Source of the DNA: Callorhinchus milii
Taxonomy: Eukaryota
Direction: 5' to 3'
Length of the DNA: 64,000 bases
Assembly (NCBI RefSeq): GCF_018977255.1
Contig: NW_024704746.1
Span: forward strand, 68,076,001-68,140,000
The position numbers and the translations under genes are program-made. Below the pieces are notes generated by a model, which was given only the letters and a program-made list of their open reading frames with translations, made no database searches and was not told the origin of the DNA. Below are positions 4,593-45,600 of the stretch, piece after piece; the first letter of the stretch is position 1; the number at the start of each line of letters is the position of its first letter.

Positions 4593-4659
4593 TCTCTCCC
4601 TCTCTCTGAGCTTCTGGTGAGTACCTTATTGTAGTCGCTGGGAATCGGCAATAATGCGC

Positions 4660-9955: not shown

Positions 9956-10669
9956 GCAGTGATCGACTGTGCCGAACGCGGCGGAGGTTCAGGACGAGGA
10001 GGCAGAGGGAGCCCTGGTCACAGATAGAGGGGATGTCGTTTGAGACTTTCACAAGCGCAGTCTCTGTCCTGTGAGAAGGTAGGAAACCTGACTGGAGGGG
10101 TTTGAAGAGGGAGCGGGAGGAGAGGTGCGCGCGGAGTTGATTGGCAACAACGCGTTCTAAGATTTTGGCGAGGAAGGGCAGTGGGTGTGTGTTTCACTGT
10201 CAATAAAGGTACTGATCCCTTGTTTGGTTGTAAAGTGAAACAAGAGGAACTCAAGGGTGTGTCTTAATATTATTAAAAAAAATACACATACTGCAGTATA
10301 TAATATAAATATCTGCATGTGAGTGTGCTCGATAGCCGAGCTGAGCATCCACTGTACAGAAGAGCTGGATGTATACAGGAACTAAAGTCACTAAAATTGA
10401 TAGTGCCTCGTTATCTTAATTTAGCTGACATTTTAATGTGTTACTAACTATGAAACCAAGAATTTAATCTAATCTGAGAATACTTTTTAGAGTTAAGGTG
10501 GTTGGCAGTCTAAAGCAGAGCGGGTTGAGGGGAGCAGGGAATATTATGTTGTCAGATGTGCCTTCCTTTCTGTGAGAAGTTACACCAAAATTGTTCAGGT
10601 GAATCTTAAAATATCTTAACAGTTTTGCATCTGCCGACACAGCCTCCTCTGCTGTCTGTTCTGCCAGTC

Positions 10670-11555: not shown

Positions 11556-11944
11556 ACTAACGGCTTGTTTCATCCCTGTATTCTCTCTCCTAATGATCTA
11601 GATGTCACTTCATGACCTCCAAATAGGCCAAAGGTGCTTGTTTGATGTGGGTCCAAAACATTTCCATTTTCATGACCAAGGCCAATCAAGAGTTCAAGAC
11701 CAGATCAAGATTTCTATCCCCATCATCCTATTCTGGTAACGACTTTCTGTTTCAGATTCTTCAGCTCCTCCTGCGAGAATGTTTCAGAACTCGTGGGTGG
11801 TTCCGCACTCACTGACACTGTGCATCATGTTCCTAATTCTCTTTGATGAAAATCTCTTTGTTTCTCGCATCAGATTTAGCCACTGTATCAAAGGGCACTC
11901 GGTAACCCCTTTTTATTCTCTTTATTGCAGATCTCCCAATAAAG

Positions 11945-11996
11945 ATGGAATTTCCTTTAAACAAAACGTTCACAATATTGATATTCTCATTGTTTG
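11945..11996 (+). CDS. Copy A exon: signal peptide MEFPLNKTFTILIFSLF(G)
   Basis: Acceptor tttattgcag|11931; ATG in strong Kozak context (aaagATGg); hydrophobic core; phase-1 donor G|gtgagt. Confidence 0.8.
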
Positions 11997-14900
11997 GTGA
12001 GTGTAGTCTTTATTCTGTGTATCTGTCTGTATGATATCCCTTTTCTATTTATTTAACTGACTTGCCATGACCTGATAAGCTAGAAACACCATCAATAATC
12101 GTTATCAATACTTCACCAGTAAAATCCATCCAAACAGCACATTAATCAATATCATCCATGTGGTTTTGTCCACATAATGGTGAGCACATTTAGAAGGTCC
12201 ATGTTCAGTTTTTAGCTCTCCAGGAAGAATATCATGGGGATGGGAAGGGTGCAGCGCAGATTTATAGGATCACATGATGTATGGGACACTACGTTTATAC
12301 TGAGGCGAGTTAACTTGAAGCTTTCTCACTGGACCAGAGGAGTTTGAAAGGGGACGTTGTAGAGTTGTTTAAGATTCTGAAACATGACAAAATAAATAGG
12401 GAAAAGGTTTCCTTTAGTTGAGGAATCACTGACAAGGATTGTTAACAGAGAAATCAGGGGAGAAGTTTGAAGTAATTTCTTCACCAAGAGAGTTTTTGGG
12501 GTGTGGAATTAATTACAAGCTATTGAGGCCAACTTAATAGGATCATGTAAAAGTGAACTGGGTAAGTGGAGTGAAATGTTAAGGAATATGGGGGAAGTGA
12601 GATTAATAAAAAGAGCAACTTTATACAAAAAAAATCACGGTGGCATAGATGTAGAACCAGCTGCCCGAAGCAGTGGTAGAACCAGATGGTATAAATGGAT
12701 TTAAGTTGAAGCTAGATCTACATGTAAGGGAGAAGGGAATAGAAGGGCATGGCAGGCGATAAGTGATGGGTAGAGAATCATGTGGGGTACACATCGGCAT
12801 GGACTCATTGGGCCAAATGGCCTGTTTCTCTGCTGTACTGCGTATATCCCTATCACCCTCATCCTTGCCCAGCTCCACTGACTTCCCATCACACAGAGGA
12901 TACAGTTCAAGATCCTGGTCCTCACTTTCAAAGCCCTCCATAGCCTTACTCCCCCCTTCTTCTCTGACCTCCTAACAGCCTACCACCCTGTTCGTTTCCT
13001 CCGCTCATCAGGCTCCGGCCTACTTCACGTCGCCCGCCTTGCTAGCCCCACTCTGCAGCCACTCTCGAGAAATCCATCCCGCTGTCTCTTCGCCTTGCCA
13101 CCTCCCTCGCCATCTTCAAGTCCTTCTTCTTCGACTGTGCTTTCGATCTTCCCGCTTCCCCCCCGCCCTCCACCTTCCCCCACCCCAGGCTCGGCTCCGT
13201 AACTCTGTCTGTCCAGCGCCTTGGGTCATCCTCCCGACATGAAAGGCGCTATACAAATGTAATTCTGTTGTTGTTGTATGTAAATATGATGGGCTAAAAA
13301 TCTGAAAATTACCTTCTTTGTTGATAATTGCAAGTTAATACTTTAACTGCTGAGTTTCCAGTGATTATGGGAATTCGAGGTTCCATGATTAGGAACTTAT
13401 GTTTAATTCACCGTGATACAGAAATAAACACTAATAATATTAATAATCCTTGCATTTGGTAGAGTGTCTTAACAACAACAACAACAAGATTACGTTACCA
13501 CGTTGTTGAGATGCTTCACAGGATGTAAAAGTAATTAAGCTGTGATGTGTAGTGGGAATAGCTGTATTGCTATGGATATGGAGCAAAGACATGTAATTGG
13601 AGTTGAGATACAGATCAGCCATGATCTTATAGAATGATGGAACAGGCTTGAGGTCCTGAATGGCCTTCTCCTGCTTCTATGTTTCTATTACAGTAGAGCT
13701 TCAATGGGGAAGCAAATACATGATGGGTGGATATCATCTTTCAGTGCTGTAAACTAACTAGGACTCTAGCACTGTAATTAACTATATCAACTTGTAACTT
13801 TTTAGGTGAGGTGTCTTTGCACATGATATCTGAAGTCGTCGGCAGAGATGTATTGCTGCCCTGTCTCTTTACACCAGAATCCAATCTTGATCCTGAGAAA
13901 CTGATCATCAACTGGCAAGGGACAGACGACAACTCAGTGGTTCACAGTTTCTACAGTAACGTTGACCATCCAGAGTATCAGAATCAGAAATTCAGAGGAA
14001 GAACACAGCTGTTTCCCAAAGTCATTCTAAATGGAAATGCTTCACTTCAACTGAGAAGGCTGACTTTATCAGACAATGGGAACTACACATGCTACGTTAT
14101 TCAACATGATGATCATGCCTATGTCAAAATTGTGGTAGAACTCAGAGTGCTTGGTAGGTATTTAGAAATCTTGCAGCAACAACAAGAATAGGAGGGTCTT
14201 GAGACATACCTTGAAGGAGGCAAGGGAGACAGCGAGGCAAAGGGACTGTGGGATGGAGTTCCAAAGGGTGGGAGCAGAGAAGCTGAAGGCCCGGCCACCG
14301 ATTTTGGGGTGGGCAAGACGGGATCTGGAGCAGCTCAAGAGTAGTTTGTTTCTTGAGGGGGTGGGCAGACATCTGACATTTACAGCGGTTGTGCACCCAC
14401 GTGATGAGTGGGTGTATTGTTCACTTTTGATGATTCCGTGTGAGTCATTTGCAAGAATATGAATGTTTGTTGCAGGTGACAGGGAGGAAGGTTGTGTTAT
14501 CCAATAGAAAGGTTTTTAAGAACTACAAAAAAGCTTCAAAGTTAAAACTGAATTCATCAATTCTGGACACTCTGAGAAGCTAATGTCAATACAGAAAACC
14601 GAGACCGAGGCAGAATTTTGCCCCAAACATCGATAAACAACACTAGCAACTTTAAATGAGGAAGGAGAGGAAGTATTTTTCCATAAACAGCTAAAATTTG
14701 AATGGACTAATGGGTTACATCAAAACATATTCTGCATGTTTTAAGAGATACGAGATTTAAGATAAGTGAGCAGGATGTGAACATGTAGATGCAAATATCC
14801 GAGTCACACTGCACAGTGCTCCAAGTCAGAGAGCCAGTACGTCTACAGCAAAATACCCAAGGCAGAATTATTTACATCTACACAATACATACACAACACA

Positions 14901-17900
14901 ACCAAATCAGAGAGTATACATAACTTCATGAACAAGGAAGACGAACTTTAAAATGTTAAAATGTCACAGTGATTAACTGTCATGTCTAGTGACTTCTGTA
15001 GGCAAATGTGGCAGTCATTTTGTGCACAGCATGGTCCCACGCAGTCATGAGTTGAATGACCAAATTAGCTGGAGGGCTGTTGGCCAGGACATCCATGGGT
15101 TTAAGGCACATTAAGTTGACATCTCTCAAGAAAAGTAGACCACAGGCTAGCATTGCCTAAGACTGTTGGCCTCGTTTCCAAGATTGCACTCACATGAAGC
15201 ACCACCCAAGCACTGTAGCTTACGTGCTGGAGAGATTGTGTGCGGTTTCTGTTTCTGTGGTTTATTTTCTTTGTTAGTCAGGAAAGGCTGCAACACAGGA
15301 AGTCAGTGTAAGTATTTTTGTAAGTCAAAACTGCAGATCTGTTTTAGCCATTGCAGCACTGCACATCCGCACATGTCAACAGCACAGTGCACATCCGCAC
15401 ATGTCAACAGCACAGTGCACATCTGCACATGTCAACAGCACAGTGCACATCTGCATATGTCAACAGCACAGTGCACATATGCACATGTCAAGCAATCACC
15501 ACATCTGTGTAATCACAAGTCAGGAAGTTTAATATTCCACAAGGCTGAGATCAAATGAGTTGAAGAGCTTTCTTCACATGAACCTCTCCTGTGATCTTGT
15601 GCAATGACTTGTACTTTAATGGCTGGGAGTAGGGCATCTTTGGACACACACAAGTCCAGACACTGTCAGGTTACTCCAGAATACAGTGGAAGCAGAGACT
15701 TCAGCCTAAGTGTTGACAGGTGCTGCTTTTATAGTCCATTTCTGACATTACTGGAGACGACAGCCTCACTAACCAGTTAGAAGCAACTGTTTCCCTCATC
15801 TGAAGCCCTCTCTGACACAGAGTGCTGAAAGGGCTTGTACAAGTAAAGTTTGATGCTACACTATTACAGGCCAAAACACACACCTTTCCTCAGGTGATTA
15901 TAGACTTACACAACCCACATGGTGAAAGCCATAGCACCGCTTTTCAGGAAGAAAATTTGCTGCCACTGCTTTATGGTTATTGCAAACTCCCAGATACAGA
16001 TACGTCACAAGTCACTGAAGACAACAACCTTGAAGATCAGATTCCAAAGGAACAAATCAGAAGATTGGGAACTGCTGCAGTATTTTTTGTCATTGTCGGG
16101 ATTGGAATTGGGATCGGGATCAAGATTGCCATCAGGAAATCGATAATGAAAAAACAGCGTCATATGGATCCTGAGAGTAAGTTTTAATATGATGAGCAAG
16201 TACCTGATCACCCGCACTAAACTCCGTCACACCACCGCACCATCACAGACTCTCCCCTACCTGTTGCCTCCTCCATCGGCTGCCGCACTTTCAGTCACTA
16301 AGCCCTGAAGCTTTGGAAATCTCTCCGCAGATCTCTCTGCCTTACTCCCTCGTTCCCCTCTTTTAGATCACGACTGAAGAGCTTCCTCTTCGACTGTTTC
16401 TAGTCACCTCCTCCCCCCGGCTCGGTGTCAGGCTCCGCTACTGTTAAGCGCTCTGAAACGCTGCTGCGCGTGAAGGGCGCTATATGCATGCAAGTTGTTA
16501 CCTACAGTTGTACATACTATCGACATTCCTGAACCAAGCAAATTATCCCCATTAATCATTTCTGGTGTTTTAAGAACAAGTGCAAGTGAGACTCCACCCA
16601 TCCGAATAATAATCCTTGCATTTGACATTGCGTCTTATCACGTTTTGAGACGTCTCAAAGCGCTTCACAGAATATCCCCCTCCCCGGCCTCCCCTCACAC
16701 ACTCTATTACCTTCTCTCGCAAATATGTACCAGGTTTCCTCTTAAACACATTGATGCTTCCAGCTTCAACCACAGCATCTGGCTGTGCTTCCACATTTTT
16801 ACCACTCTATAAAATAATTTCTTCCTAAACTCTGTTTCAGATCTGTTAGTGGCTATTTTAGATTTATGCCCCATTGTTATGGACTTGCGAACGAGCAGAA
16901 ACAATCTTTTTCTGTTCACCTTACCAAATGCCTCTCCAATTTTAAACGCTTCTATCGAGTCTCTCAATCATCTTATCTCTAAGGATGAAACCCCGAAGCA
17001 GTTCAGTCTTTCCTAATACTTAGATACTCTCATCCCTGGGAGCATTCTAGTAAGCCTATGATAATACTACAATAACATTATATAGTGACAAAAACTGCGC
17101 ACAGTAATCCAAATATGGTCTGACCAACGATTATACAAATTTTACATTACTTCCTTGCTTTTGTGTTCTCTTCCCAGGGCATAAAAAAGTTCCTCTGCAC
17201 TCTAGTCAGGCTCCGCCATTGTTAAGCGCTCTGAGATGCTGCCCTGGGTGGAGGGCGCTATGTCGGTGCAAGTTGCTGTTGTAGTATTTGGATTCTATAT
17301 GGTCTTAACCACCTGTGCTGCTGTTTTAAAAGATACAGAGATTGCCCCAGATTGAGTATTGGTCTGTGCTGAGTTAGCTATTCTGGTCTAGTTAGTCTGA
17401 TTCGGGAAAAGAGGAGAAAATCAACCACAATTCTTACTGCTCTCCGTATTCTTCTCGATTTTGATCTCAGATGCTAGTGTCATCTTACAATTTCTTTGGC
17501 TCTCATAGAAATTACAGCACAGAAATGAGCCCATCGTGTCCATACCGCTGGCTCCCTCTGGAGCCCTCTACTGTTAGATTCCCCTGGTCTCTCTCCCCAC
17601 CACACACATTGTCTGTGCTGTGCGCACTCTCCCTCTGGTGCTGTCCACTATAATCCCATTCTTGTATTCTTTACAGTTAGTTATTCTTTTTCGATGAGCT
17701 ATAATTTAATAGAAAGATCAGGGGCTCTGAATTGTTTGATTTGGGGAATTTGTAACTAATAATAATACTGGCATTTGATGTAACGCCTTATCACGTCTTC
17801 GAGACTCTCAAAGCGCTTCACAGAATATAGTGTAAATTGAATTGACTATATTTTGTGGGCGAAACACGGCAGTCAATTGCGCCCAAACAAAATGTAATAT

Positions 17901-20900
17901 CTAATATCTATATAATATAAACAAACTGTCACTAATTGACTTGGAAATTGTATTTTGTTTTTCCAGGAGCGGCTTTGATAAGATACCCAAACATGGCAGG
18001 TAATAAGCTGAGCTCAATTCATGCTGTATTAATTCCAGGCCAATCTCTGCAACTAATTGTAATAAAAAGATGCCTGTTTTCCCCAGGAACAGATAACTGG
18101 AGTTTGGATTTGGGACTGTGTTAGTGTGGAGCTTCACGAGTATAATTCATGGCATTTGCTGCTTTCTGCCTTCACCCTGGTTTCTGCCTCAATTACTACT
18201 ACCCCAGGCTTCTGCTCCTCCCTTTGAATGCCATTAAAATGTTTAATGTTTTCTAACTCAATGCATACCATTTAAACGCAGCATATGCTCACCAAAATGC
18301 TGTATAGAATTAGACAAGTGCAGGTGGGCGGGGGCATAAAGCCAGGAGCTTTATTTACAGTGAAATACAGGAAAACGCTCATAATCATATCAGTTGGGAA
18401 CAACATTTGCAAACTTGTATGATTTAATCATTAATCTACACCGCACATGTGTAATGCAATGCAGCCGGCAAGTCCGCAAGCTGCAGTTTGTCATCCCAGC
18501 CAGGAAGTGCTCATGCCGTGATGGGTCACGACTGTTCTCTGCGATTGAAAGCAGCCGTAAGTGCAGGAGTAATGGAGGATAGGAGAGCAGTGTTACCAGT
18601 TAGGAGATGATTAATTTGACTGGTGCAAAGAAGTTAAGTCGTTTTGATAGGAAACTGAATGGATGGACGTACGACATTGGCGATTGTACGATTTATAAGC
18701 AATTTTTAAATTTATAAGCGATTTATAAGCCTTGAGAGCTTTACTATAATCTACTGGATCAACCACCTTAACTCAATAAGAGCAAATAGTATAGCCCAAC
18801 ATTAAAAGACAGACCCTCTGAGAAGCTCTAGGATGTTGGTTTGAGGAATGACAAATTATACTGGTCACATTAAGTCCTGAGGGAAGAAATTACATCTGAA
18901 TTTTAATCTTAAACACAAAATACTGCAGTGCTGGAAGTCTGAAATAAAAACTGAAGTCGCTGGGAACTCAGCAGGTCAGACAGCATCTATGGAGAAAAGA
19001 AAATGAGTCAACGTTTCGGGTCCACGACCTTTTGTCAGAACACCGGTTCTGGTGAAGGGTTGTGGACTTGAAACGTTAACTCACTTTCCTTTCTCCATAG
19101 ATGCTGCCTGACCTGCTGAGTTCCCAGCGACTTCAGTTTTTATTCCTAGATTTAATCTATTTTCTTAGCAATTCAGAGCCTCCCGTGTTTGGACAATACA
19201 TAAGAATTGTGCAAATTGCACAGACTCTGAAATGCTCAGAATATAAAGAACCACAAAATAAAACATGAGTTTGTTTCTTTTCAGATGCTCTTGAAGACTA
19301 CAAACTGTACCTTACAAAGAAGTATTCTAATATGATCAATAGTAACATGTCCAAATGCTACGCAAGCCTCATGAGGACAGTGGATGTCACATACCCAAAG
19401 AAGGAAGGAAAGTTCATTGAGGGAATTAATGGAGGTGGGTCAGACAATACAAAAGAAATCAAACCAACTGAAATGCTGTCTGTGGCACTGGGAAAAAAGT
19501 GCTCTTCAAAACGTATCTTAATGGTAGGAGATGCAGGTGTGGGGAAGAGCTGGACAGTTACCTGCATGAGACAAGAATGGGCGTCTGAGTCAAACGAACA
19601 ACCTTTTAAGTGCATCATTATTTTGAGATTCCATGACTTAAATAAGGTTAAAGAAAAGACAACGCTACGGAAACTGCTTCAGAGCAAGTGCTCATCACTG
19701 TCAGAAGTCCTGTCTGCACTTCTCCTTGATCCCCATGATGTGTTGATCACTTTGGATGGGCTGGATGAATTTCACCATCAGCTAAGTTGTGATGCTCCAA
19801 TAAGGGACATTGACATAGACACTGAAGCTGACGTGAACGTTCTTGTGTCCGATCTGATTTGTGGGCAACTGCTTCCTGCTGCACACATATTGGTTACCTC
19901 CCGATGGAATAATGACCAGATAAAAATTAACAAGAAATATTTTGATTGCATCCTGGCCATTTCTGGGTTTACCACTAATCAGCTACGACAATACTGCGAT
20001 GTGTTCTATCAAGATAAGGAAACAGCAAGCAAGATGTATCAACATTTTACAGAGAAAGAAACCATCACCTATCTGGCCTGCAATCCCCTAAACAGCTATA
20101 TGCTGTGCAATATTCTGAAGACATGTAAAGATTACTCTGAAGGGGTAACGGCTGTGCCAGTGACTCAGAGCAAACTCTTCTCTCTGTTCTTTGACAGCCT
20201 CTTTAGTCATGGTACTCCAGGCACTGACCAGTCACACAAATTGTCAGCGACTGATCTGGAGAAATGTAAGGATAGACCCCATGACAAAATTGTTGAAACC
20301 ATCCTAAAAGTGGGGAAGCTTTCCTATCACTATCTCTTGTCAGGGAAACACAACATGGTAGAGAAAGATCTGATTGCCTTCGATATAAACCCAACATTTC
20401 TTTCCAGTCACTTGTCAAATCTCATCTTGGAAAAGAAATGGGACAATCGGAGCAGCTTTGAGTTCTATCATGCTATGATAATGGAGCAGGTTGCAGCCTG
20501 GTATTGTGCAGACTTAGTGAGGGACAAAGCCGAAGAGCTGATCGAATGCCTGGACCTGTGGTGTCTTGGAAAGGTGCCACAGAACTCAAAGAACCCGTTG
20601 TGTATTGAAGCAGCCAAGTGGCCTGAGCACAAGAAGAACCTCTTCAGTTTCACCAAAATGTTCATGGGCTTCTTAACGGCAGGACGAGGTGGAAACTTCT
20701 GGAAGTCTGCAGCTCCCCTCAGTGATTCTACTTCCCAAGCCCTGGTCAGGTGGTTTAGGGACTGGCTATGTACAGATATAAAGCAGTCTGAGCTGCTAAA
20801 TTTAATGCATTGCCTTTTCGAGCTGCACGATAACAAAGTGACAGAAGAAGTGTCTCCTCACATCAAACGCATAGACTTTTACAACATTTCTCTGAGCCTC

Positions 20901-23065
20901 CTGGATATCGCTGCCTTGTGTTACAGTCTCCGTCATTCTCAGGTGGAAAAAATGGACTTAAGACTTTGTGACTTGAAGGATCAAGGCATAAGGCAACTTG
21001 AGGAAGTAATTGCCAAGTGCAAATCTGTCTCGTAAGTAACGCTGTTAAATGCTTCACGGGTGATGGGACAGTTCTCTCTGTGTTTCCATTGCAACATCAG
21101 TGTGACATATTGCATAGTCATTAGATTAGAATGAAGAACATGCTCACTGTCATACTAGAAAGATTTTATCACCCCAGATCAGGCTGCGCTATCAGCCTCT
21201 ACGTCCTGACACTCTGGAACACTCTCCCTCTGTCCCTCCGCCTTGCCCCTTCCTTCCCTATCTTCAGGTCCTGCCTGAAGACCTTTCTCCTTGACCGTGC
21301 TCTGGGACGAGACCTGCGTGAGGGGCGCTGTTGTTGTTGGTGGTGGTGTTTGCTCAGCCAATTTGTGAATAAGCTCTTCGAGAGGACAAGTTCAGGACAG
21401 ACAGCAAAAAGGAATCTGTGGGTAAACAACAGTTGGAATGTGTTACCAAAAATCGTTGGGCCACAGAATCATTTAAGAATCAGTTTGATGGTGTAAATGG
21501 GAGGATCAGTATTCGCTAATCGCTTGAGATCCTGTGATTTAAAATGGTAATTTAATCCACACTCAAGTGTTTCTAATCTCCATTTTACAGAATAAGTTCT
21601 AACAAACTGACTGAAGAGTCAGCCAGGATAATCAGCAACATTCTTCAAGAACCAAGTTGTGCACTTGAAAGGCTATCGTAAGTTCCTAAATACTTTTCGC
21701 AATACGTCTATGAAATACGAAGGGAAAATTCCAAAAGATGCCAATCTTTTAAAAAGGGATGCTACGACTTGCCTCTTTGATTATGATTATTTTTCCTCAA
21801 CCCCGACACCCTTTTCAGCTCCCCTGCTCGGATGCCTAACTCGCTGTGTAAAGTGCTTTGAGACGTCCTCCTGACGTGAAAGACACTATAAGTGTAAATT
21901 GTATTGTATCATCACTGTTGTGTGTCTGTTCATTCGCTCTTTGTAGAATTGGAACAAATCACCTTCAATCCAGCGGGGCTCAGATGATATGGAAAGCCCT
22001 TGAGAAAAACCAGAGACTCAAGCGCCTTTATTTGTATGATAACGGGATTACAGATAAAGGAACAGAGATAATGCCTGAATGTCTGAAACACAACAAGACC
22101 CTTGAAGTCCTACAGTAAGTCTACAATCAATTTTCTAAACGTCAGTGAAACCCCAGCTATAATTACAAGCGAGTCAGCCTGACTCAGTTGATAGCACTTT
22201 CGCCTCTGAGTCAAAGCTTTTGGGTTCAAGCCCCATGTTATAAGATGACACTCCAATGCAATGTCGCATTGTTGGGTAAGATGTTAAACCGAGGTCCGTC
22301 TACCTGCTCTGGTGGATGTTAAAGGTCCCGTTGGGCTATTCGAAAAGAGAAAAGGAGTTTCTCCCGGTGTCATGGCATACAATCCCCCAAATAAAATAGA
22401 TCACTCACTGCTTGGCTGTGGGTGGGAGATTGGTAGGCACAATTGGGCTGCTGTATTTGCCTACAATACAGTCACTCCACTTTACAGTATATCCTCTGAA
22501 GCACTTGGGATGTCATCCCGATATGAAAGGCACTATACTAAATTATTATTTTAATATTAGGAATTATTATTTTATCATTAGCAATCATCGAGCAATGTTA
22601 ATTAGACCTCTAATTTTCATACTTTGTCTGTCACAAACAGTAAAGATAGCAAATACACTTCAGTATCCACACCTTATATTGGAGCTAAGGTGACCGTTGA
22701 CTTTTCATTTCCCAAGCCTGTCTCTTAATGTCTTTCTCAGTTTATGTGGGAACACTTTCAGTGATTGCGGCCAGAGAAATATCCAGCGAGTTAAAGAGCT
22801 TCGAGCTGATCTGAAGATCGTTGTGAAGATTGCAGATGATGAAGAACTTGTCGATCGGGTTGAAAACGAAGTCACCCAGCTGATCTCTGACTTTGGGCAG
22901 TACGACCGGGAATGGCTGACAAATATTCTGCGAACAATCTTGAGAGATCTTGGAGATGAGATCTCCATAACCAATACCAGAACAGAGACAAAGATTGGTA
23001 ACATAAAACAAGGGATTCAGATAGTGCAACGCAAGCTTAAATGGGATGCCATAGCCGAATTATAA
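11945..23065 (+). CDS. Copy A: predicted 8-exon gene, signal peptide-IgV-TM-NACHT-LRR receptor (980 aa); join(11945..11996,13806..14153,15994..16176,17967..17999,19285..21031,21591..21677,21947..22114,22741..23065)
   Basis: All introns GT-AG with pyrimidine tracts; intron phases 1,1,1,1,2,2,2 are mutually compatible; total 2943 nt is divisible by 3 with a single terminal TAA; domain order fits a type I membrane protein. Confidence 0.75.
12200..13275 (+). mobile_element. Intronic CR1 3' fragment (~12200-12835) followed by L2 3' fragment (~12840-13275)
   Basis: CR1-type 3' end gggccaaatggcctgtttc; L2 ttcaagatcctggtcctcactttcaaagccctcc and tail ...cccgacatgaaaggcgctatacaaatg..(TTG)n. Confidence 0.75.
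13806..14153 (+). CDS. Copy A exon: B7/butyrophilin-type Ig V-set domain
   Basis: LLPC...INWQ...VVHSFY...QKFRGRTQLF...GNASLQLRRLTLSDNGNYTCYV; canonical Cys/Trp/Cys and D-x-G-x-Y-x-C; 348-nt phase 1-1 exon (tttag|gt ... g|gtaggt). Confidence 0.92.
15361..15492 (+). repeat. 28-bp minisatellite (GCACATCTGCACATGTCAACAGCACAGT x ~4.7) in the IgV-TM intron; B copy ~45975-46106
   Basis: Visible tandem units. Confidence 0.92.
15994..16176 (+). CDS. Copy A exon: acidic stalk, transmembrane helix and basic stop-transfer segment
   Basis: DTDTSQVTEDNNLEDQ...LGTAAVFFVIVGIGIGIGI-K-IAI-RKSIMKKQRH; acceptor ctcccag|, donor a|gtaagt; phase 1-1. Confidence 0.85.
16230..17160. mobile_element. Intronic cluster: L2 3' end (+, ~16230-16500), SINE tail (-, ~16605-16675), CR1 fragment (-, ~16690-17160)
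   Basis: Recognisable L2 and SINE tails; CR1-like minus-strand peptides (FGKVNRKRLF, EFRKKLF). Confidence 0.7.
17967..17999 (+). CDS. Copy A 33-nt micro-exon (R)AALIRYPNMA
   Basis: Strong acceptor tgtattttgtttttccag|, donor cag|gtaata; phase 1-1, frame-preserving; exon sequence identical in copy B. Confidence 0.6.
18943..19144. repeat. ~200 bp imperfect palindrome (Penelope-like/MITE-type repeat) ~140 bp upstream of the NACHT exon; B copy ~49527-49728
   Basis: Arms AATAAAAACTGAAGTCGCTGGGAACTCAGCAGGTCAG... / ...CTGACCTGCTGAGTTCCCAGCGACTTCAGTTTTTATT around a short loop at ~19042-19045. Confidence 0.85.
19285..21031 (+). CDS. Copy A exon: NACHT domain, winged helix/HD2 and first LRRs (NLRC3/NLRP-like)
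   Basis: Walker A GDAGVGKS, Walker B LITLDGLDEF, sensor ILVTSR, CNPL, FEFYHAMIMEQVAAWY; acceptor tttcttttcag| (phase 1), donor tc|gtaagt (phase 2). Confidence 0.93.
21591..21677 (+). CDS. Copy A LRR exon (87 nt)
   Basis: ISSNKLTEESARIISNILQEPSCALERL; cattttacag| and tc|gtaagt; phase 2-2; size typical of ribonuclease-inhibitor-like LRR exons of NLRs. Confidence 0.85.
21947..22114 (+). CDS. Copy A double-LRR exon (168 nt)
   Basis: IGTNHLQSSGAQMIWKALEKNQRLKRLYLYDNGITDKGTEIMPECLKHNKTLEVL; 2 x 84 nt, phase 2-2, ctttgtag| and ca|gtaagt. Confidence 0.88.
22170..22560 (+). mobile_element. Old Deu-domain-type SINE in the last intron; related copy ~31720-32220
   Basis: tRNA-like head, taaaccgaggtccgtctacctgctctggtggatgttaaagg..tttctcccggtgtc central block, L2-type tail; family assignment is from recall of DeuSINEs. 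Confidence 0.6.
22741..23065 (+). CDS. Copy A terminal exon: last LRR/cap plus helical C-terminal extension
   Basis: tctttctcag|t LCGNTFSDCGQRNIQRVKEL...KLKWDAIAEL-TAA; phase-2 acceptor in frame with the previous exon. Confidence 0.82.
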
Positions 23066-40000: not shown

Positions 40001-42565
40001 CAGCTAATGACCTGACGCTGCCTTCTCCCCATATCCCTTAATCCCTTTTGCAATAAGAAATCTATCTCAGTCTTGAATATGTTCGAGGACTGAGCGTCAA
40101 CAGCCCTTTGGGGTAGTGAGTTCCATACATTCACTGCCCTTTGAGTGAAGAAGTTCTTCCTCAACTCAGTGCGAAAGGGCTGCCTCTGATTTTAAGGTTG
40201 TGAACCCCTGGTTTTAGTTTCTCCAACCGGGGACACAATCTCCCACTGTCTACTCTATCATTGCCCTTTGATGATCTTGTAGGTTTCTATAAGATCCCCT
40301 CTAATTCTTCTATATTCTAGAGAATATCGGCCCAAATTGGTCAGCCTATCCTCGTAACTCATCCCCTTCATCCCTGGTACTAACCGAGTAAATCTACGCT
40401 GCACCCCCTCCAAGGCAAGTACGTCCTTCCTTAAATAAGGAGACCACAACTGCACACAGTATTCCAGGTGTGGTCTCACAGGGCCCTATACAGTTGCAGT
40501 AAGACTTCCCTACTCTTATACTCTAACCCTTTCATAATGAATGCTAACATACCGTTCGCCTTCCTAATTGCTTGCTTGCAGTAATCGACTGTGCCGAATG
40601 CGGCGGAGGTTCAGGACGAGGAGGCAGAGGGAGCCCTGGTCACAGATAGAGGGGATGTCGTTTGAGACTTTCACAAGCGCAGTCTCTGTCCTGTGAGAAG
40701 GTAGGAAACCTGACTGGAGGGGTTTGAAGAGGGAGCGGGAGGAGAGGTGCGCGCGGAGTTGATTGGCAACAACGCGTTCTAAGATTTTGGCGAGGAAGGG
40801 CAGTGGGTGTGTGTTTCACTGTCAATAAAGGTACTGATCCCTTGTTTGGTTTTAAAGTGAAACAAGAGGAACTCAAGGGTGTGTCTTAATATTATTAAAA
40901 AAAATACACATACTGCAGTATATAATATAAATATCTGCATGTGAGTGTGCTCGATACCCGAGCTGAGCATCCACTGTACAGAAGAGCTGGATGTATACAG
41001 GAACTAAAGTCACTAAAATTGATAGTGCCTCGTTATCTTAATTTAGCTGACATTTTAATGTGTTAATAACTATGAAACCAAGAATTTAATCTAATCTGAG
41101 AATACTTTTTAGAGTTAAGGTGGTTGGCAGTCTAAAGCAGAGCGGGTTGAGGGGAGCAGGGAATATTATGTTGTCAGATGTGCCTTCCTTTCTGTGAGAA
41201 GTTACACCAAAATTGTTCAGGTGAATCTTAAAGTATCTTAACAATTTTGCATCTGCCGACACAGCCTCCTCTGGTGGTTCCGCCAGTCTATTAGTTCACG
41301 ATAATTCCTTTAATTCACTTTTCATGTCTTCTCTCCATACTCACAATAGCTCTTACAGTATAAAATCAATCAAAAACCCATGGATTTTAACTCATCCACT
41401 GGGGTGTTGAATTGGAGAGCGATCGAACCCTAGTTGCATAAAAGTTTTAAAAAAATTGTTTTCTGTGCTTCAGTACCACCAGACATTCAGTCACAAACAC
41501 ACTGAAAGAAACATCCGTGGCTTGGTATGTCGATATACTTGCTTATGATTTTCATTCCATTCCATTTCCATTACATTTCATTCAAATTAGTTCACCGCAA
41601 TTCCTTTAATTCACTGTTCATGTCTTCTCTCCATACTCACAAAACAACAACATTTTTGTATACTCTGACTTTCCAAGTACAGCATCAATCACAGACCCAT
41701 GGATTTGAATCCATCCACTTGGGTGGTGAATTGGGCGACCAAATCCTAGTTGCATAAATAATAATAATAATAATAATCCTTGCATTTGATATAGCGCTTT
41801 TCACGTCGGGAGGACGTCCCAAAGCGCTTCACAGAACACATTGTAAAGTGAATTGACTGTATATTTGTGGGCGAACGCGGCAGCCAATTGCGCACAGCAA
41901 TGTCCCACAAACAGTCGTAGATTGAAAATGACCAATTTATTATTGTTTTTGGTTTTGGAGGGATTATTATTAGGCTCTGTGTGGAGTAAGGAAACTTGCC
42001 CAAGGTTTGGCCCTCTGCCTGGAATTGAACTCAGGTCTCTCACTTGCAAAGCGAGTACTCTAACCACTGAGCTACAGGACTCCACAAGATTGTTTTCTGT
42101 GTTTCATTATCACCAGATTCACACAAGCACCACATTGAAACTGAAAGAAACGTTTGCATGGCTTGCATGTCAATATACTAACGGCTTGTTTCATTCCTGT
42201 ATTCTCTCTCCTAATGATCTAGATGTCACTTCATGACCTCCAAATAGGCCAAAGGTGCTTGTTTGATGTGGGTCCAAAACATTTCCATTTTCATGACCAA
42301 GGCCAATCAAGAGTTCAAGACCAGATCAAGATTTCTATCCCCATCATCCTATTCTGGTAACGACTTTCTGTTTCAGATTCTTCAGCTCCTCCTGCGAGAA
42401 TGTTTCAGAACTCGTGTGTGGTTCCGCACTCACTGACACTGTGCATCATGTTCCTAATTCTCTTTGATGAAAATCTCTTTATTTCTCGCATCAGATTTAG
42501 CCACTGTATCAAAGGGCACTCGGTAACCCCTTTTTATTCTCTTTATTGCAGATCTCCCAATAAAG

Positions 42566-42617
42566 ATGGAATTTCCTTTAAACAAAACGTTCACAATATT
42601 GATATTCTCATTGTTTG
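42566..42617 (+). CDS. Copy B signal peptide exon
   Basis: Same sequence as the copy A exon; donor gtgagt at 42618. Confidence 0.8.
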
Positions 42618-45600
42618 GTGAGTGTAGTCTTTATGCTGTGTATCTGTCTGTATGATATCCCTTTTCTATTTATTTAACTGACTTGCCATGACCTGATAAG
42701 CTAGAAACACCATCAATAATCGTTATCAATACTTCACCAGTAAAATCCATCCAAACAGCACATTAATCAATATCATCCATGTGGTTTTGTCCACATAATG
42801 GTGAGCACATTTAGAAGGTCCATGTTCAGTTTTTAGCTCTCCAGGAAGAATATCATGGAGATGGGAAGGGTGCAGCGCAGATTTATAGGATCACATGATG
42901 TACGGGACACTACGTTTATAGTGAGGCGAGTTAACTTGAAGCTTTCTCACTGGACCAGAGGAGTTTGAAAGGGGACGTTGTAGAGTTGTTTAAGATTCTG
43001 AAACATGACAAAATAAATAGGGAAAAGGTTTCCTTTAGTTGAGGAATCACTGACAAGGATTGTTAACAGAGAAATCAGGGGAGAAGTTTGAAGTAATTTC
43101 TTCACCAAGAGAGTTTTTGGGGTGTGGAATTAATTACAAGCTATTGAGGCCAACTTAATAGGATCATGTAAAAGTGAACTGGGTAAGTGGAGTGAAATGT
43201 TAAGGAATATGGGGGAAGTGAGATTAATAAAAAGAGCAACTTTATACAAAAAAAATCACGGTGGCATAGATGTAGAACCAGCTGCCCGAAGCAGTGGTAG
43301 AACCAGATGGTATAAATGGATTTAAGTTGAAGCTAGATCTACACGTAAGGGAGAAGGGAACAGAAGGGCATGGCAGGCGATAAGTGATGGGTAGAGAATC
43401 ATGTGGGGTACACATCGGCATGGACTCATTGGGCCAAATGGCCTGTTTCTCTGCTGTACTGCGTATATCCCTATCACCCTCATCCTTGTCCAACTCCACT
43501 GACTTCCCATCACACAGAGGATACAGTTCAAGATCCTGGTCCTCACTTTCAAAGCCCTCCATGGCCTTACTCCCCCCTTCTTCTCTGACCTCCTAACCGC
43601 CTACCACCCTGTTCGCTTCCTCCGCTCATCAGGCTCCGGCCTACTTCACGTCGCCCGCCTTGCTAGCCCCACTCTGCAGCCACCCTCTAGAAATCCATCC
43701 CGCTGTCTCTTCGCCTTGCCACCTCCCTCGCCATCTTCAAGTCCTTCTTCGACTGTGCTTTCGATCTTCCCGCTTCCCCCCCGCCCTCCACCTTCCCCCA
43801 CCCCAGGCTCGGCTCCGTAACTCTGTCTGTCCAGCGCCTTGGGTCATCCTCCCGACATGAAAGGCGCTATACAAATGTAATTCTGTTGTTGTTGTATGTA
43901 AATATGATGGGCTAAAAATCTGAAAATTACCTTCTTTGTTGATAATTGCAAGTTAATACTTTAACTGCTGAGTTTCCAGTGATTATGGGAATTCGAGGTT
44001 CCATGATTAGGAACTTATGTTTAATTCACCGTGATACAGAAATAAACACTAATAATATTAATAATCTTTGCATTTGTTAGAGTGTCTTAACAACAACAAC
44101 AACAAGATTACGTAACCACGCTGTTGAGATGCTTCACAGGATGTAAAAGTAATTAAGCTGTGATGTGTAGTGGGAATAGCTATTGCTATGGATATGGAGC
44201 AAAGACATGTAATTGGAGTTGAGATACAGATCAGCCATGATCTTATAGAATGATGGAACAGGCTTGAGGTCCTGAATGGCCTTCTCCTGCTTCTATGTTT
44301 CTATCACAGTAGAGCTTCAATGGGGAAGCAAATACATGATGGGTGGATATCATCTTTCAGTGCTGTAAACTAACTAGGATTCTAGCACTGTAATTAACTA
44401 TATCAACTTGTAACTTTTTAGGTGAGGTGTCTTTGTACATGATATCTGAAGTCGTCGGCAGAGATGTATTGCTGCCCTGTCTCTTTACACCAGAATCCAA
44501 TCTTGATCCTGAGAAACTGATCATCAACTGGCAAGGGACAGACGACAACTCAGTGGTTCACAGTTTCTACAGTAACGTTGACCATCCAGAGTATCAGAAT
44601 CAGAAATTCAGAGGAAGAACACAGCTGTTTCCCAAAGTCATTCTAAATGGAAATGCTTCACTTCAACTGAGAAGGCTGACTTTATCAGACAATGGGAACT
44701 ACACATGCTACGTTATTCAACATGATGATCATGCCTATGTCAAAATTGTGGTAGAACTCAGAGTGCTTGGTAGGTATTTAGAAATCTTGCAGCAACAACA
44801 AGAATAGGAGGGTCTTGAGACATACCTTGAAGGAGGCAAGGGAGACAGCGAGGCAAAGGGACTGTGGGATGGAGTTCCAAAGGGTGGGAGCAGAGAAGCT
44901 GAAGGCCCGGCCACCGATTTTGGGGTGGGCAAGACGGGATCTGGAGCAGCTCAAGAGTAGTTTGTTTCTTGAGGGGGTGGGCAGACATCTGACATTTACA
45001 GCGGTTGTGCACCCACGTGATGAGTGGGTGTATTGTTCACTTTTGATGATTCCGTGAGTCATTTGCAAGAATATGAATGTTTGTTGCAGGTGACAGGGAG
45101 GAAGGTTGTGTTATCCAATAGAAAGGTTTTTAAGAACTACAAAAAAGCTTCAAAGTTAAAACTGAATTCATCAATTCTGGACACTCTGAGAAGCTAATGT
45201 CAATACAGAAAACCGAGACCGAGGCAGAATTTTGCCCCAAACATCGATAAACAACACTAGCAACTTTAAATGAGGAAGGAGAGGAAGTATTTTTCCATAA
45301 ACAGCTAAAATTTGAATGGACTAATGGGTTACATCAAAACATATTCTGCATGTTTTAAGAGATACGAGATTTAAGATAAGTGAGCAGGATGTGAACATGT
45401 AGATGCAAATATCCGAGTCACACTGCACAGTGCTCCAAGTCAGAGAGCCAGTACGTCTACAGCAAAATACCCAAGGCAGAATTATCTACATCTACACAAT
45501 ACATACACAACACAACCAAGTCAGAGAGTATACATAACTTCATGAACAAGGAAGACGAACTTTAAAATGTTAAAATGTCACAGTGATTAACTGTCATGTC

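What the first reader, a model, noticed from the sequence alone, without database searches (positions are those of the whole stretch)
11945..23065. Candidate new receptor class: extracellular B7/butyrophilin IgV + transmembrane helix fused to a cytoplasmic NACHT-LRR (membrane-anchored NLR)
Seen: exons for signal peptide, IgV, stalk/TM, micro-exon, NACHT and LRRs lie in order on one strand. The TM exon ends at a phase-1 GTAAGT donor and the NACHT exon starts at a phase-1 acceptor, so splicing gives one 980-aa frame (969 aa without the micro-exon). I found no stop-containing cytoplasmic exon of a separate B7 gene and no CARD/PYD/death-domain exon for the NLR in between. Established: vertebrate NLRs are typically cytosolic with N-terminal CARD/PYD/BIR effectors, and BTN3A1 senses ligands through its intracellular B30.2 domain and signals via extracellular IgV to gamma-delta T cells. 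Inference: IgV-TM replaces the NLR effector domain. NACHT oligomerisation after LRR sensing could cluster the IgV at the surface (inside-out signalling), or IgV ligation could activate the NLR. Walker A/B are intact. I do not know of a described vertebrate protein with this architecture but could not search.
Basis: partly seen in the sequence, partly recalled or inferred. Interest (0 to 1): 0.93.

Follow-up and report, generated by a model that had tools for sequence, protein, structure and literature searches.

The report
Membrane-anchored NLR with B7-like ectodomain
The elephant-shark window holds a real, intact gene, present twice, for a single-pass membrane protein with a B7-H3-like immunoglobulin domain outside the cell and a NACHT-LRR innate-immune switch inside; the same gene occurs from sharks to alligators, and I found no paper that describes it.

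Summary
On the + strand, eight coding exons (11945-23065) splice into one open frame. It is letter-for-letter RefSeq Callorhinchus milii "protein NLRC3-like" isoform X2 (980 aa). The form without the micro-exon matches a 969-aa UniProt entry in length and exon structure. An intact second copy lies 30.6 kb downstream.

The gene is not a prediction artefact:
- A sawfish genomic locus has the same eight exons and the same phases.
- Two intron-free transcript-like contigs (a skate and a salamander-like species) carry the whole IgV-TM-NACHT-LRR frame.
- All 24 aligned relatives have V-set, NACHT and HD2 domains.

The family is not shark-specific. Members occur in chimaera, sharks, rays, gars, coelacanth, lungfish, all three amphibian orders and alligators. 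A tree built from the NACHT region alone makes them one clade that follows the species tree. Its sister carries a CARD where this family carries IgV+TM.

New here are a conserved [DE]xxxL[LI] sorting motif, encoded across the TM-exon/micro-exon junction, and a three-helix C-terminal tail.

The sequences sit in databases under misleading names. I found no paper describing a vertebrate NLR of this kind; sea-cucumber AjNLRC4 is the closest analogue. The direction of signalling is unresolved, and I favour inside-out. Interest is high.

The parts
11645..11735 (+). Optional 5' coding exon of RefSeq isoform X1. Its upstream ATG adds 35 aa in front of the signal peptide.
   Evidence: Including it reproduces P0001 (XP_042191490) exactly. 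Orthologues start at the downstream Met, so this exon probably acts as 5' UTR or an alternative first exon.
11931..11996 (+). Exon carrying the ATG at 11945 and the signal peptide (MEFPLNKTFTILIFSLF/G). It ends in phase 1.
   Evidence: A hydrophobic N-terminus is present in the orthologues.
13806..14153 (+). IgV exon (348 nt, phase 1 to 1) of B7-H3-like V-set type.
   Evidence: Pfam V-set scores 1.7e-10. CD276 IgV is the best hit in the PDB at 41% identity. C37, W54 and C113 are invariant in 24 relatives. The sawfish exon has the same 348-nt length.
15994..16176 (+). Stalk and transmembrane-helix exon (AVFFVIVGIGIGIGIKIAI followed by RKSIMKKQRH). It ends at a phase-1 GTAAGT donor.
   Evidence: The Kyte-Doolittle 19-residue mean is 2.52. 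A single hydrophobic helix sits at this position in every orthologue, with net positive charge after it.
17967..17999 (+). 33-nt micro-exon (RAALIRYPNMA). Together with the last Glu of the TM exon it forms ERAALI, an acidic dileucine [DE]xxxL[LI] motif.
   Evidence: A motif at the equivalent place is present in 22 of the 30 IgV-family sequences tabulated. The sawfish has a 30-nt exon in the same phase.
19285..21031 (+). Large exon (phase 1 in, phase 2 out) encoding the linker, nucleotide-binding domain with Walker A and B, HD1, winged helix with the FEFYH histidine, HD2 and the first LRR.
   Evidence: Pfam NACHT 6e-21 and NLRC4_HD2 1.5e-8. PDB sequence hits are NLRP9, NLRP3 and NOD2. The AF2 model matches closed NOD2 and NLRP3.
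21591..21677 (+). 87-nt LRR exon (ISSNKLTEESARIISNILQEPSCALERLS), phase 2 to 2.
   Evidence: It is needed to reproduce P0026 and P0001. The sawfish exon has the same 87-nt length. It is present in the transcript-derived entry V9KLB9.
21947..22114 (+). 168-nt double-LRR exon, phase 2 to 2.
   Evidence: The sawfish exon has the same length.
22741..23065 (+). Last exon: final LRR plus a conserved C-terminal tail of about 85 aa with three helices. The stop codon is at 23063-23065.
   Evidence: AF2 predicts helices at 907-926, 929-943 and 952-979. The tail has no Pfam family. It is conserved in all relatives and in the CARD sister.
42266..53647 (+). Copy B, the same nine exons (eight coding exons plus the optional upstream exon): 42266-42356, 42552-42617, 44422-44769, 46608-46790, 48559-48591, 49869-51615, 52172-52258, 52528-52695, 53323-53647.
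   Evidence: It has an intact frame and differs from copy A at 9 of 3048 coding bases, 8 of which change the amino acid. It equals P0025 (XP_007907325.2). Across 15.3 kb the two units are 98.9% identical.

Best explanation
Gene and product. This is one gene for a single-pass type I membrane NLR. After the signal peptide is cleaved, one glycosylated B7-H3-like IgV domain and a short stalk face the outside of the cell or the lumen of an endosome. One TM helix anchors the protein. The rest lies in the cytosol:
- a basic juxtamembrane stretch;
- an acidic dileucine sorting motif;
- a linker of about 75 aa;
- a NACHT ATPase switch;
- about four LRRs;
- a three-helix tail.

Origin. The gene arose before the split of cartilaginous and bony vertebrates. 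IgV and TM exons, all phase 1, took the N-terminal position that a CARD holds in the sister NLR.

Mechanism I favour (inferred, not shown). The conserved LRR-tail module keeps the NACHT closed and ADP-bound until a cytosolic cue releases it. Nucleotide-driven oligomerisation then pulls the N-termini together. Here that clusters the TM helices and IgV domains in the membrane, and may change exposure of the dileucine motif and so the amount at the surface. An intracellular alarm would thus become multivalent display of a B7-like ligand to another cell. This is inside-out signalling, as in BTN3A1.

Confidence by step: one gene and this architecture, about 0.95; type I topology, about 0.85; inside-out direction, about 0.4.
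For: One gene:
- The product is an exact match to RefSeq models.
- The sawfish locus L003 has the same 8 coding exons with the same phases; three exons have the same length.
- The skate contig L001 (3341 bp, uninterrupted 982-aa ORF) aligns to sawfish DNA in blocks that end at exon edges. The TM exon runs on to the NACHT exon across a 28-nt stretch where the sawfish micro-exon would lie.
- A second full-length intron-free contig, L004, comes from a salamander-like species.

Conserved family:
- V-set, NACHT and HD2 are found in 24 of 24 relatives.
- In a tree built without the IgV, the family is one clade with 100/100 support and follows the species tree.

Topology:
- There is a signal peptide and a single hydrophobic helix.
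- Mean net charge is 0.0 in the 15 residues before the helix and +2.25 in the 15 after it.
- Asn95 is invariant and forms an N-x-S/T sequon in 19 of 24 relatives; the Cys37/Trp54/Cys113 core is invariant.

NLR switch:
- Walker A, Walker B and the winged-helix His are present.
- The AF2 model (pLDDT 78, pTM 0.70) best matches ADP-bound NOD2 and closed NLRP3.

Effector swap:
- The sister clade has a CARD followed by the same NACHT, LRR and tail.

Inside-out direction:
- No death-fold or other known output domain is found in the cytosolic part.
- The LRR is the best-conserved region (0.70 mean pairwise identity), level with the nucleotide-binding domain (0.69); the IgV stands at 0.60.
- B7-type IgVs are ligands for receptors on other cells, and BTN3A1 is a precedent (established knowledge).
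Against: - No Callorhinchus transcript read across the 16176 > 19285 junction was available to me. The only transcript-derived elephant-shark entry covers the C-terminal half.
- The organisms and library types of the Logan runs could not be checked.
- Topology is predicted, not measured.
- Nothing tested here tells inside-out from outside-in.
- A single IgV on a stalk is also the layout of many surface receptors.
- The only characterised Ig-TM-NACHT protein, sea-cucumber AjNLRC4, signals outside-in (PMC8699970).
- The alligator orthologue has lost its Walker A motif yet keeps the rest, so ATPase cycling is not indispensable in every lineage.
- A short IgV-TM isoform exists in skate.
Confidence: 0.4

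Rival explanations
1. Outside-in receptor. The IgV binds an extracellular or lumenal ligand, either a microbe or a host counter-receptor. Cross-linking raises the local NACHT concentration, and the resulting oligomer acts as the cytosolic signalling or uptake platform. The dileucine motif drives internalisation of the engaged receptor.
For: - The single IgV, stalk and TM layout is typical of immunoreceptors (established knowledge).
- AjNLRC4 in sea cucumber works this way (PMC8699970).
- The conserved [DE]xxxL[LI] motif fits receptor endocytosis.
Against: - No recognisable output domain lies on the cytosolic side.
- The IgV is strongly conserved (0.60 identity) and of B7 ligand type, not diversified as expected for pathogen binding.
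- The sister keeps the same LRR-tail sensor with a CARD output. This suggests the sensor stayed cytosolic and only the output was swapped.
Confidence: 0.25
2. Membrane-tethered regulatory NLR. The protein has no output of its own. It sits at the plasma or endolysosomal membrane and dampens or scaffolds other pathways, as NLRX1 and NLRC3 do. The IgV serves mainly for sorting, for cis-interactions or as a lumenal anchor.
For: - No effector domain is present.
- The short LRR followed by a helical bundle recalls the C-terminal fragment of NLRX1, which is a sequence hit at E 3e-15.
- A sorting motif is present.
- The alligator copy lacks a P-loop.
Against: - The IgV keeps B7-H3-like surface residues and glycosylation sites over more than 400 million years. 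That is more conservation than a mere anchor needs.
- The ATPase motifs are intact nearly everywhere.
Confidence: 0.15
3. Annotation artefact. A B7-like IgV-TM gene and a downstream NLR gene are separate, and gene predictors and the reader joined them wrongly.
For: - A short IgV-TM-only transcript (214 aa) exists in skate, with its own alternative 3' exon.
- No elephant-shark junction read was available to me.
Against: - Full-length intron-free contigs exist from two species.
- The exon phases are the same in chimaera and sawfish.
- The architecture is co-inherited across about 30 species, and the NACHT tree is congruent with the species tree.
- No alternative N-terminal exon for the NACHT and no stop-bearing tail exon was found in the window intron.
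Confidence: 0.03
4. Resistosome-like executioner. NACHT oligomerisation bundles the TM helices into a pore or channel that kills or depolarises the cell, as N-terminal helices do in plant ZAR1-type NLRs.
For: - The TM helix sits at the N-terminal, effector, side of the NACHT.
- The elephant-shark helix is a GxGxGxG run, and sharks have VGVGVG.
Against: - The small-residue pattern is not conserved in rays, gar, lungfish, amphibians or alligator. TM identity is only 0.29.
- An ectodomain with a conserved ligand-type IgV is unexplained by a pore role.
Confidence: 0.03

Closest known systems
Vertebrate NLRs of the NLRP / NOD type (NLRP3, NLRP9, NOD2)
   Same: - The order of domains is NACHT, winged helix, HD2, LRR.
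- Walker A, Walker B and the winged-helix His are present.
- The predicted fold best matches closed ADP-bound NOD2 and NLRP3.
- The LRR exons are phase-2 units of 87 and 168 nt.
   Different: - There is no CARD, PYD or BIR.
- The N-terminus is a signal peptide, IgV and TM helix, so the protein is integral to a membrane instead of cytosolic.
- It has only about four LRRs, followed by a family-specific three-helix tail.
- Identity to any named NLR is about 25% or less.
NLRC3, the name given by the databases
   Same: Both are NACHT-LRR proteins without a classical signalling output.
   Different: This is not an NLRC3 orthologue. A bird NLRC3 falls outside the clade in the tree, identity is about 25%, and the N-terminus, LRR number and C-terminus all differ.
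CD276 / B7-H3, and more distantly B7-H4, MOG, butyrophilins and PD-L1
   Same: The IgV is 41% identical to human B7-H3 IgV1. It shares the hallmark stretch ...VHSF...RT.LF......GNASL.L......D.G.[YF]TC.V.
   Different: - There is a single IgV with no IgC domain.
- The cytoplasmic part is a full NACHT-LRR instead of a short tail (B7) or a B30.2 domain (butyrophilin).
BTN3A1 / BTN2A1 butyrophilins
   Same: As a working analogy, both couple an extracellular B7-type IgV to an intracellular ligand-sensing module through one TM helix. Inside-out signalling is established for BTN3A1 (established knowledge).
   Different: The intracellular sensor here is a STAND ATPase with LRRs, not B30.2. The two are related only in the IgV.
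AjNLRC4 of the sea cucumber Apostichopus japonicus (PMC8699970)
   Same: It has extracellular Ig domains, a membrane anchor and an intracellular NACHT, and it is experimentally a surface receptor.
   Different: - It has two Ig domains and two predicted TM segments, and no LRR.
- It is an echinoderm protein, presumably assembled independently. Homology beyond the shared domains was not tested here.
- It acts in actin-driven phagocytosis.
Predicted TM-containing NLRs of sponges and cnidarians (PMC12909245, PMC3879445)
   Same: A NACHT is combined with predicted TM segments, which challenges the 'animal NLRs are cytosolic' rule.
   Different: These are invertebrate proteins with no B7-type IgV. 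They are predictions only and their architectures are not conserved into vertebrates.
CARD-NACHT-LRR-tail sister clade (Alosa, Sardina, Spea; annotated 'NLRC3-like')
   Same: It has the same NACHT, short LRR and C-terminal helical tail. It is the nearest relative in the tree, with 99/97 support.
   Different: It has an N-terminal CARD (Pfam hit at 4e-5 in Spea) instead of signal peptide, IgV and TM, and it has no TM helix.

Membership tests
NLR (NACHT-LRR STAND ATPases) | NACHT nucleotide-binding domain with Walker A (GxxxxGK[ST]) and Walker B (hhhhD[GD]xDE) | tested here: met
   Pfam NACHT scores 6e-21. The motifs are GDAGVGKS and LITLDGLDEF. NACHT is found in 24 of 24 relatives.
NLR (NACHT-LRR STAND ATPases) | Winged-helix and HD2 modules and C-terminal leucine-rich repeats | tested here: met
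   NLRC4_HD2 scores 1.5e-8. LRR_6 is found in 20 of 24 relatives. The FEFYH histidine is present. The AF2 model matches NOD2 and NLRP3, with TM-score up to 0.83 on the NACHT alone.
NLR (NACHT-LRR STAND ATPases) | Cytosolic protein with an N-terminal death-fold or BIR effector (CARD, PYD, BIR) | tested here: not met
   No such domain is found in the protein or in the intron ORFs. The N-terminus is a signal peptide, V-set domain and TM helix.
NLRC3 orthologue group | Orthology to NLRC3: clusters with NLRC3, has a long LRR array and a CARD-like N-terminus | tested here: not met
   A bird NLRC3 lies outside the clade. Identity is about 25%. The protein has only about 4 LRRs.
B7 / butyrophilin family | N-terminal B7-type IgV with the canonical Cys-Trp-Cys core | tested here: met
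   CD276 IgV is the best PDB hit (69.5 bits for a single IgV-IgC chain) at 41% identity. C37, W54 and C113 are invariant.
B7 / butyrophilin family | Membrane-proximal IgC domain | tested here: not met
   The product maps exactly onto the exons with nothing between the IgV and the stalk/TM. Pfam finds only V-set or generic Ig matches on that same single Ig domain, and no C1-set or C2-set (IgC) match in any of the 24 relatives.
Butyrophilins | Cytoplasmic B30.2 (PRY-SPRY) domain | tested here: not met
   There is no SPRY or PRY hit.
Type I single-pass membrane protein | Cleavable signal peptide, one TM helix, positive-inside charge bias, lumenal glycosylation sites | tested here: met
   These are sequence-level checks only. 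SignalP, DeepTMHMM and experimental topology were not available.
AjNLRC4-like echinoderm membrane NLRs | Common descent of the Ig-TM-NACHT fusion | not tested
Its architecture differs (two Ig domains, two TM segments, no LRR; PMC8699970), so I treat it as an analogue.

The most novel reading that the evidence does not exclude
Jawed vertebrates ancestrally had an 'alarm-display' receptor. A cytosolic NLR sensor is hard-wired through the membrane to a B7-H3-like IgV, so intracellular danger is converted directly into multivalent presentation of a co-signalling ligand to lymphocytes. This would be an NLR-based forerunner or parallel of butyrophilin/gamma-delta T-cell sensing. The gene was later lost in teleosts, birds and mammals. 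Because the IgV is so close to B7-H3, its partner could also point to the still-unidentified B7-H3 receptor.
Probability: 0.2. Interest if true: 0.95.

Novelty: new variant of a known kind. Interest (0 to 1): 0.8.

Why it matters
Animal NLRs are taught as cytosolic sensors whose N-terminal death-fold domains recruit adaptors. This finding is a vertebrate NLR built into a membrane, with a co-stimulatory-type immunoglobulin domain in the effector position. It has been kept for more than 400 million years in sharks, gars, lungfish, amphibians and crocodilians, and no paper I could find describes it.

If it is functional, it gives a direct physical link between innate cytosolic sensing and cell-surface immune communication. 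It also shows how exon shuffling between the Ig superfamily and NLRs made new receptors, and it offers a handle on the orphan B7-H3 axis.

The gene is testable in laboratory animals that carry it: Pleurodeles, axolotl (only a partial, 526-aa relative seen here) and spotted gar.

The finding also shows that the automatic names in use (NLRC3-like, NLRP1 homolog, 'uncharacterized') hide a distinct family.

Tried and rejected
- My first exon set used the strong-looking acceptor at 15894 and gave a frameshift. I then enumerated acceptors. Position 15904 closes the frame, but RefSeq and the orthologue alignment use 15994.
- Pfam scans of the C-terminal tail, of the pre-NACHT linker and of five longer ORFs in the TM-to-NACHT intron found no family above noise.
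- The first AF2 run with 10 sequences was too poor to use (pLDDT 58). It was repeated with 24 sequences.
- Looking for an exact elephant-shark transcript contig of the 980-aa product found nothing.
- The 3' sequence of the skate short isoform has no match in the window.
- High-scoring profile hits with several IgV matches turned out to be multi-IgV proteins without a NACHT.
- Solved structures do not identify the CARD sister as any named NLR.
- Eight literature searches found no vertebrate Ig-TM-NACHT description. The library lacks most subscription journals, so this is not proof.
- The glycine-zipper/pore idea was dropped because the TM pattern is not conserved.


Full report
**What is in the window**

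The window comes from the elephant shark, Callorhinchus milii. I mapped the 980-aa protein P0026 (XP_042191492/3, 'protein NLRC3-like isoform X2') back onto the DNA with a splice-aware exact matcher. This gave eight coding exons, every intron flanked by GT and AG:
- 11945-11996: signal peptide.
- 13806-14153: IgV.
- 15994-16176: stalk and TM.
- 17967-17999: micro-exon.
- 19285-21031: NACHT to HD2.
- 21591-21677: LRR.
- 21947-22114: LRR.
- 22741-23065: last LRR plus tail.

The phases run 0/1, 1/1, 1/1, 1/1, 1/2, 2/2, 2/2, 2/stop. Leaving out the micro-exon keeps the frame and gives 969 aa, the length and exon structure of UniProt A0A4W3JFK0.

Three details should be added:
- The frame closes only with the acceptor at 15994. 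A stronger-looking acceptor at 15894 is out of frame, and one at 15904 is in frame but not the one the annotation and the orthologues use.
- The 87-nt LRR exon at 21591-21677 belongs to the gene.
- RefSeq isoform X1 adds an upstream exon (11645-11735) whose ATG would put 35 residues in front of the signal peptide. Orthologues start at the downstream Met.

**Domains**

- Pfam finds V-set (1.7e-10), NACHT (6e-21) and NLRC4_HD2 (1.5e-8), with weaker winged-helix and LRR matches.
- Walker A (GDAGVGKS), Walker B (LITLDGLDEF) and the winged-helix histidine (FEFYH) are present.
- The closest solved relative of the IgV is CD276/B7-H3, at 41% identity over 90 aligned residues. B7-H4, MOG, the butyrophilins and PD-L1 follow.
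- The closest solved relatives of the NACHT-LRR are NLRP9, NLRP3 and NOD2.
- An AlphaFold2 model built on 24 relatives reached mean pLDDT 78 and pTM 0.70. It shows an Ig sandwich, a long helix at 152-188, an NLR body, and three helices after the LRRs (907-926, 929-943, 952-979).
- Foldseek places the body closest to ADP-bound NOD2 and closed NLRP3.
- Neither the tail nor the 75-residue linker before the NACHT matches any Pfam family. The longer ORFs in the 3.1-kb intron between the TM and NACHT exons have no domain.

**Is it really one gene?**

Four independent lines say yes.
1. The same full-length architecture is predicted in many other species at 43-49% identity over 96-99% of the length. 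Among them are the sharks Heptranchias, Pristiophorus, Scyliorhinus, Chiloscyllium, Stegostoma and Heterodontus, and the rays Rhinoraja, Amblyraja, Leucoraja, Pristis, Mobula, Hypanus and Hemitrygon.
2. The genomic locus of the sawfish Pristis pectinata (L003) has the same eight coding exons with the same phases. The IgV exon (348 nt) and the two LRR exons (87 and 168 nt) have the same lengths, and the micro-exon is 30 nt.
3. A Logan contig from run SRR11241622 (L001, 3341 bp) carries a 5' UTR with in-frame stops, an uninterrupted 982-aa ORF and a 3' UTR. Aligned to the sawfish genome it breaks into blocks that end at the exon edges. The TM exon continues, after 28 nt at the position of the sawfish micro-exon, straight into the NACHT exon. 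This is what a spliced mRNA looks like. A second such contig (L004, SRR5127389, 3675 bp, 1008-aa ORF) comes from a species close to Pleurodeles.
4. Both halves are conserved to similar degrees. Mean pairwise identities are IgV 0.60, nucleotide-binding domain 0.69, LRR 0.70 and tail 0.51. The stalk, TM and juxtamembrane parts stand at about 0.3, as expected for linkers.

One caveat applies to the elephant shark itself. I have only gene models and a transcript-derived C-terminal half (V9KLB9), and no read across the TM-NACHT junction. My belief that V9K-series entries derive from the published transcriptome rests on my own knowledge.

**A family across jawed vertebrates**

A profile of ten cartilaginous-fish sequences was run against 1.84 billion representative proteins. 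It found further single-stretch, end-to-end matches. Cluster look-ups place these as follows:
- spotted and alligator gar;
- African lungfish;
- coelacanth (a partial model);
- frogs: Discoglossus, Ascaphus, Bombina, Hyperolius, Pelobates, Pelodytes, Ranitomeya, Mantella, Pyxicephalus, Engystomops;
- salamanders: Pleurodeles, Ambystoma;
- a caecilian;
- both Alligator species.

All 24 full-length members that I aligned have V-set, NACHT and HD2. A maximum-likelihood tree made from the NACHT-to-HD2 region only, so without the IgV, puts all of them in one clade with 100/100 support. The internal order follows the species tree: cartilaginous fishes against bony vertebrates, with gar, lungfish and coelacanth branching outside the tetrapods. 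There is an extra duplication in frogs. The fusion therefore arose once, before the crown of jawed vertebrates, and has been inherited vertically.

Searches seeded with the alligator and gar proteins found no member in teleosts, other ray-finned fishes, turtles, squamates, birds or mammals. Those searches depend on shared words, so absence is suggested but not shown.

The nearest outgroup (99/97 support) is a small set of proteins from shads, sardine and a spadefoot toad. These have the same NACHT, short LRR and helical tail but start with a CARD (Pfam CARD at 4e-5 in Spea) and have no TM helix. The direction of the swap is not yet polarised.

**Features that bear on mechanism**

*Topology.* Nearly every full-length member has a hydrophobic N-terminus and one strongly hydrophobic helix (Kyte-Doolittle above 2 in most) about 150-180 residues in; the exceptions are noted below. 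The helix is followed by a Lys/Arg cluster. Mean net charge is 0.0 in the 15 residues before the helix and +2.25 in the 15 after it. In the IgV, Cys37, Trp54, Cys113 and Asn95 are invariant. Asn95 forms an N-x-S/T sequon in 19 of 24 relatives. This fits a type I protein with the IgV outside or in a lumen and the NACHT-LRR in the cytosol.

*Sorting motif.* Ten to thirty-five residues after the helix, 22 of the 30 IgV-family sequences tabulated have an acidic dileucine motif [DE]xxxL[LI]. Examples are EKAPLL in sharks, EKIHLL in rays, EGVPLI in gar, DQEALL in newt and DAEKLI in alligator. The Glu and both Leu positions are nearly invariant among cartilaginous fishes. In the window it reads ERAALI: the Glu is the last full codon of the TM exon and the rest is the micro-exon. 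That such motifs bind AP adaptor complexes is established knowledge. That this one does is inference. If it does, including or skipping the micro-exon would switch endocytic or endolysosomal sorting.

*TM helix.* The run of small residues in the elephant-shark helix (GIGIGIGI) is not conserved outside sharks, which argues against a conserved pore-forming role.

*Exceptions.* The alligator protein has lost its P-loop (GNTAKIISRT). One Stegostoma isoform model lacks the TM exon.

*Short isoform.* In skate there is also a 214-aa form (P0130, contig L002). It matches the full-length cDNA closely (96% identity) up to the end of the micro-exon and then continues into different sequence that does not start with GT. 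That sequence matches, at 73% over 192 nt, a stretch of the sawfish intron about 1 kb upstream of the NACHT exon. It is therefore an alternative 3' exon, not simple intron retention. The locus thus makes a B7-like IgV-TM protein as well as the full NLR, at least in batoids.

**How it most likely works**

Shown or strongly supported:
- It is one polypeptide.
- It has type I layout.
- It carries an NLR switch with intact nucleotide-binding motifs, predicted in the closed state.
- It has a B7-H3-like ectodomain.
- It has a conserved juxtamembrane sorting motif.
- It has no known output domain in the cytosol.

Inferred: in NLRs the C-terminal LRR side senses and restrains, and the N-terminal side is what oligomerisation brings together. 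Here the N-terminal side is the membrane anchor and the IgV. I therefore favour inside-out coupling, at about 0.4. A cytosolic cue acts on the highly conserved LRR-tail module and opens the NACHT. The oligomer clusters the helices and IgVs and may mask the dileucine signal. The cell then displays a multivalent B7-like ligand. This parallels BTN3A1, where an intracellular B30.2 domain senses and the ectodomain reports.

Alternatives:
- Outside-in, about 0.25. Its precedent is sea-cucumber AjNLRC4, an Ig-TM-NACHT surface receptor that binds bacteria and drives actin-dependent uptake (PMC8699970). It would need an as yet unseen cytosolic output.
- A tethered regulatory NLR in the manner of NLRX1 or NLRC3, about 0.15.
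- Mis-joined genes, about 0.03.
- A resistosome-like pore, about 0.03.

**What is known, and novelty**

The sequences are not new. RefSeq, Ensembl/UniProt and others hold them as 'NLRC3-like', 'NLRP1 homolog', 'NLRP6-like', 'NOD1-like', 'NLRC5-like' or 'uncharacterized'. They are not NLRC3 orthologues.

Eight full-text searches over about 8.4 million open papers and preprints found no description of a vertebrate NLR with an Ig ectodomain and a TM helix:
- The whale-shark genome paper, which surveys cartilaginous-fish NLRs, does not mention it.
- The zebrafish NLR paper does not.
- A survey of tetrapod inflammasome genes does not.
- The AjNLRC4 authors state that proteins with both Ig and NACHT had not been reported.

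Subscription journals are mostly outside the library, so a description may exist that I could not see. I class the finding as a new variant of a known kind: an NLR whose effector slot holds a B7-type ectodomain and a membrane anchor.

**The second copy**

The unit is repeated about 30.6 kb downstream. Copy B (42266-53647) is intact and equals XP_007907325.2. It differs at 9 coding bases, 8 of which change the amino acid. The two units are 98.9% identical over 15.3 kb.

The alignment of the second unit starts at 34012, the first base after the 25-N gap at 33987-34011. The older UniProt model and the transcript-derived fragment are mosaics of A-type and B-type residues. The two 'genes' might therefore be two haplotypes placed in tandem across a scaffold join, not paralogues. 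I did not try to resolve the gap.

Noticed in passing
window 33987-34011 with 3265-33986 versus 34012-62187: The 25-N gap lies exactly where the second ~30.6-kb unit begins to align with the first. An older UniProt model (P0028) and a transcript-derived fragment (P0027) are mosaics of copy-A and copy-B residues. Copies A and B may be haplotigs joined in tandem instead of true paralogues.
   Followed up: partly
window copy A versus copy B coding exons: Eight of the nine coding differences change the amino acid: H58Y, R192T, V198A, R216G, N256T, E762D, Q859H and R878C in the 1015-aa numbering. Coding mismatch is 0.30%, against 0.67% over the whole 15.3-kb unit.
   Followed up: partly
window 15894, 15904, 15994: There are three candidate acceptors for the stalk/TM exon. 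The best-looking one (ttcctcag|G at 15894) is out of frame and would end the protein after the IgV. The one at 15904 is in frame, and 15994 is the one RefSeq uses. Use of 15894 would give a truncated soluble IgV or a target for nonsense-mediated decay.
   Followed up: partly
L002 (skate contig) and L003:17626-17813 (sawfish intron): A 214-aa IgV-TM-only isoform in skate uses an alternative 3' exon. Its sequence is 73% conserved in the sawfish intron about 1 kb upstream of the NACHT exon. No counterpart was found in the window.
   Followed up: partly
P0213 (Alligator mississippiensis XP_059581677): The only amniote members found are from alligators. The Walker A P-loop there is degenerate (GNTAKIISRT), while the IgV, TM, dileucine motif, LRR and tail are kept.
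   Followed up: partly
P0229 (Stegostoma tigrinum isoform X2): This predicted isoform joins the IgV directly to the pre-NACHT linker and lacks the stalk/TM exon. That would put an NLR behind a signal peptide without an anchor, so it is probably a model error or a non-productive splice form.
   Followed up: no
window 3766-5221, 7189-8527, 34520-36011, 38050-39157: These are large G+C-rich minisatellite blocks (C-rich units of about 48-57 bp followed by GTGGGG-type arrays, 60-70% GC). They create long spurious ORFs on both strands just upstream of each gene copy.
   Followed up: partly
window 57705-58296: A 15-bp tandem repeat (GGACGAGCCGCTGGT) is present in 39.5 copies at 87% match.
   Followed up: no
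window 1367-1438, 11394-11456, 29524-29591, 36970-37041, 42015-42077, 58733-58800: Six Rfam tRNA matches of modest score lie next to repeated sequence. They look like tRNA-derived SINE heads, not tRNA genes.
   Followed up: no
window 264-2605 (+), 56295-57684 (-), 9637-10193 (-) and its copy 40261-40815 (-): ORF fragments here have the look of LINE reverse transcriptase or endonuclease (judged by eye only). The introns of the gene also hold such debris, for example 16710-16967 on the minus strand.
   Followed up: no
window 11645-11735: The first coding exon of RefSeq isoform X1 would put 35 residues in front of the signal peptide and so might block ER targeting. Orthologues do not have it.
   Followed up: partly
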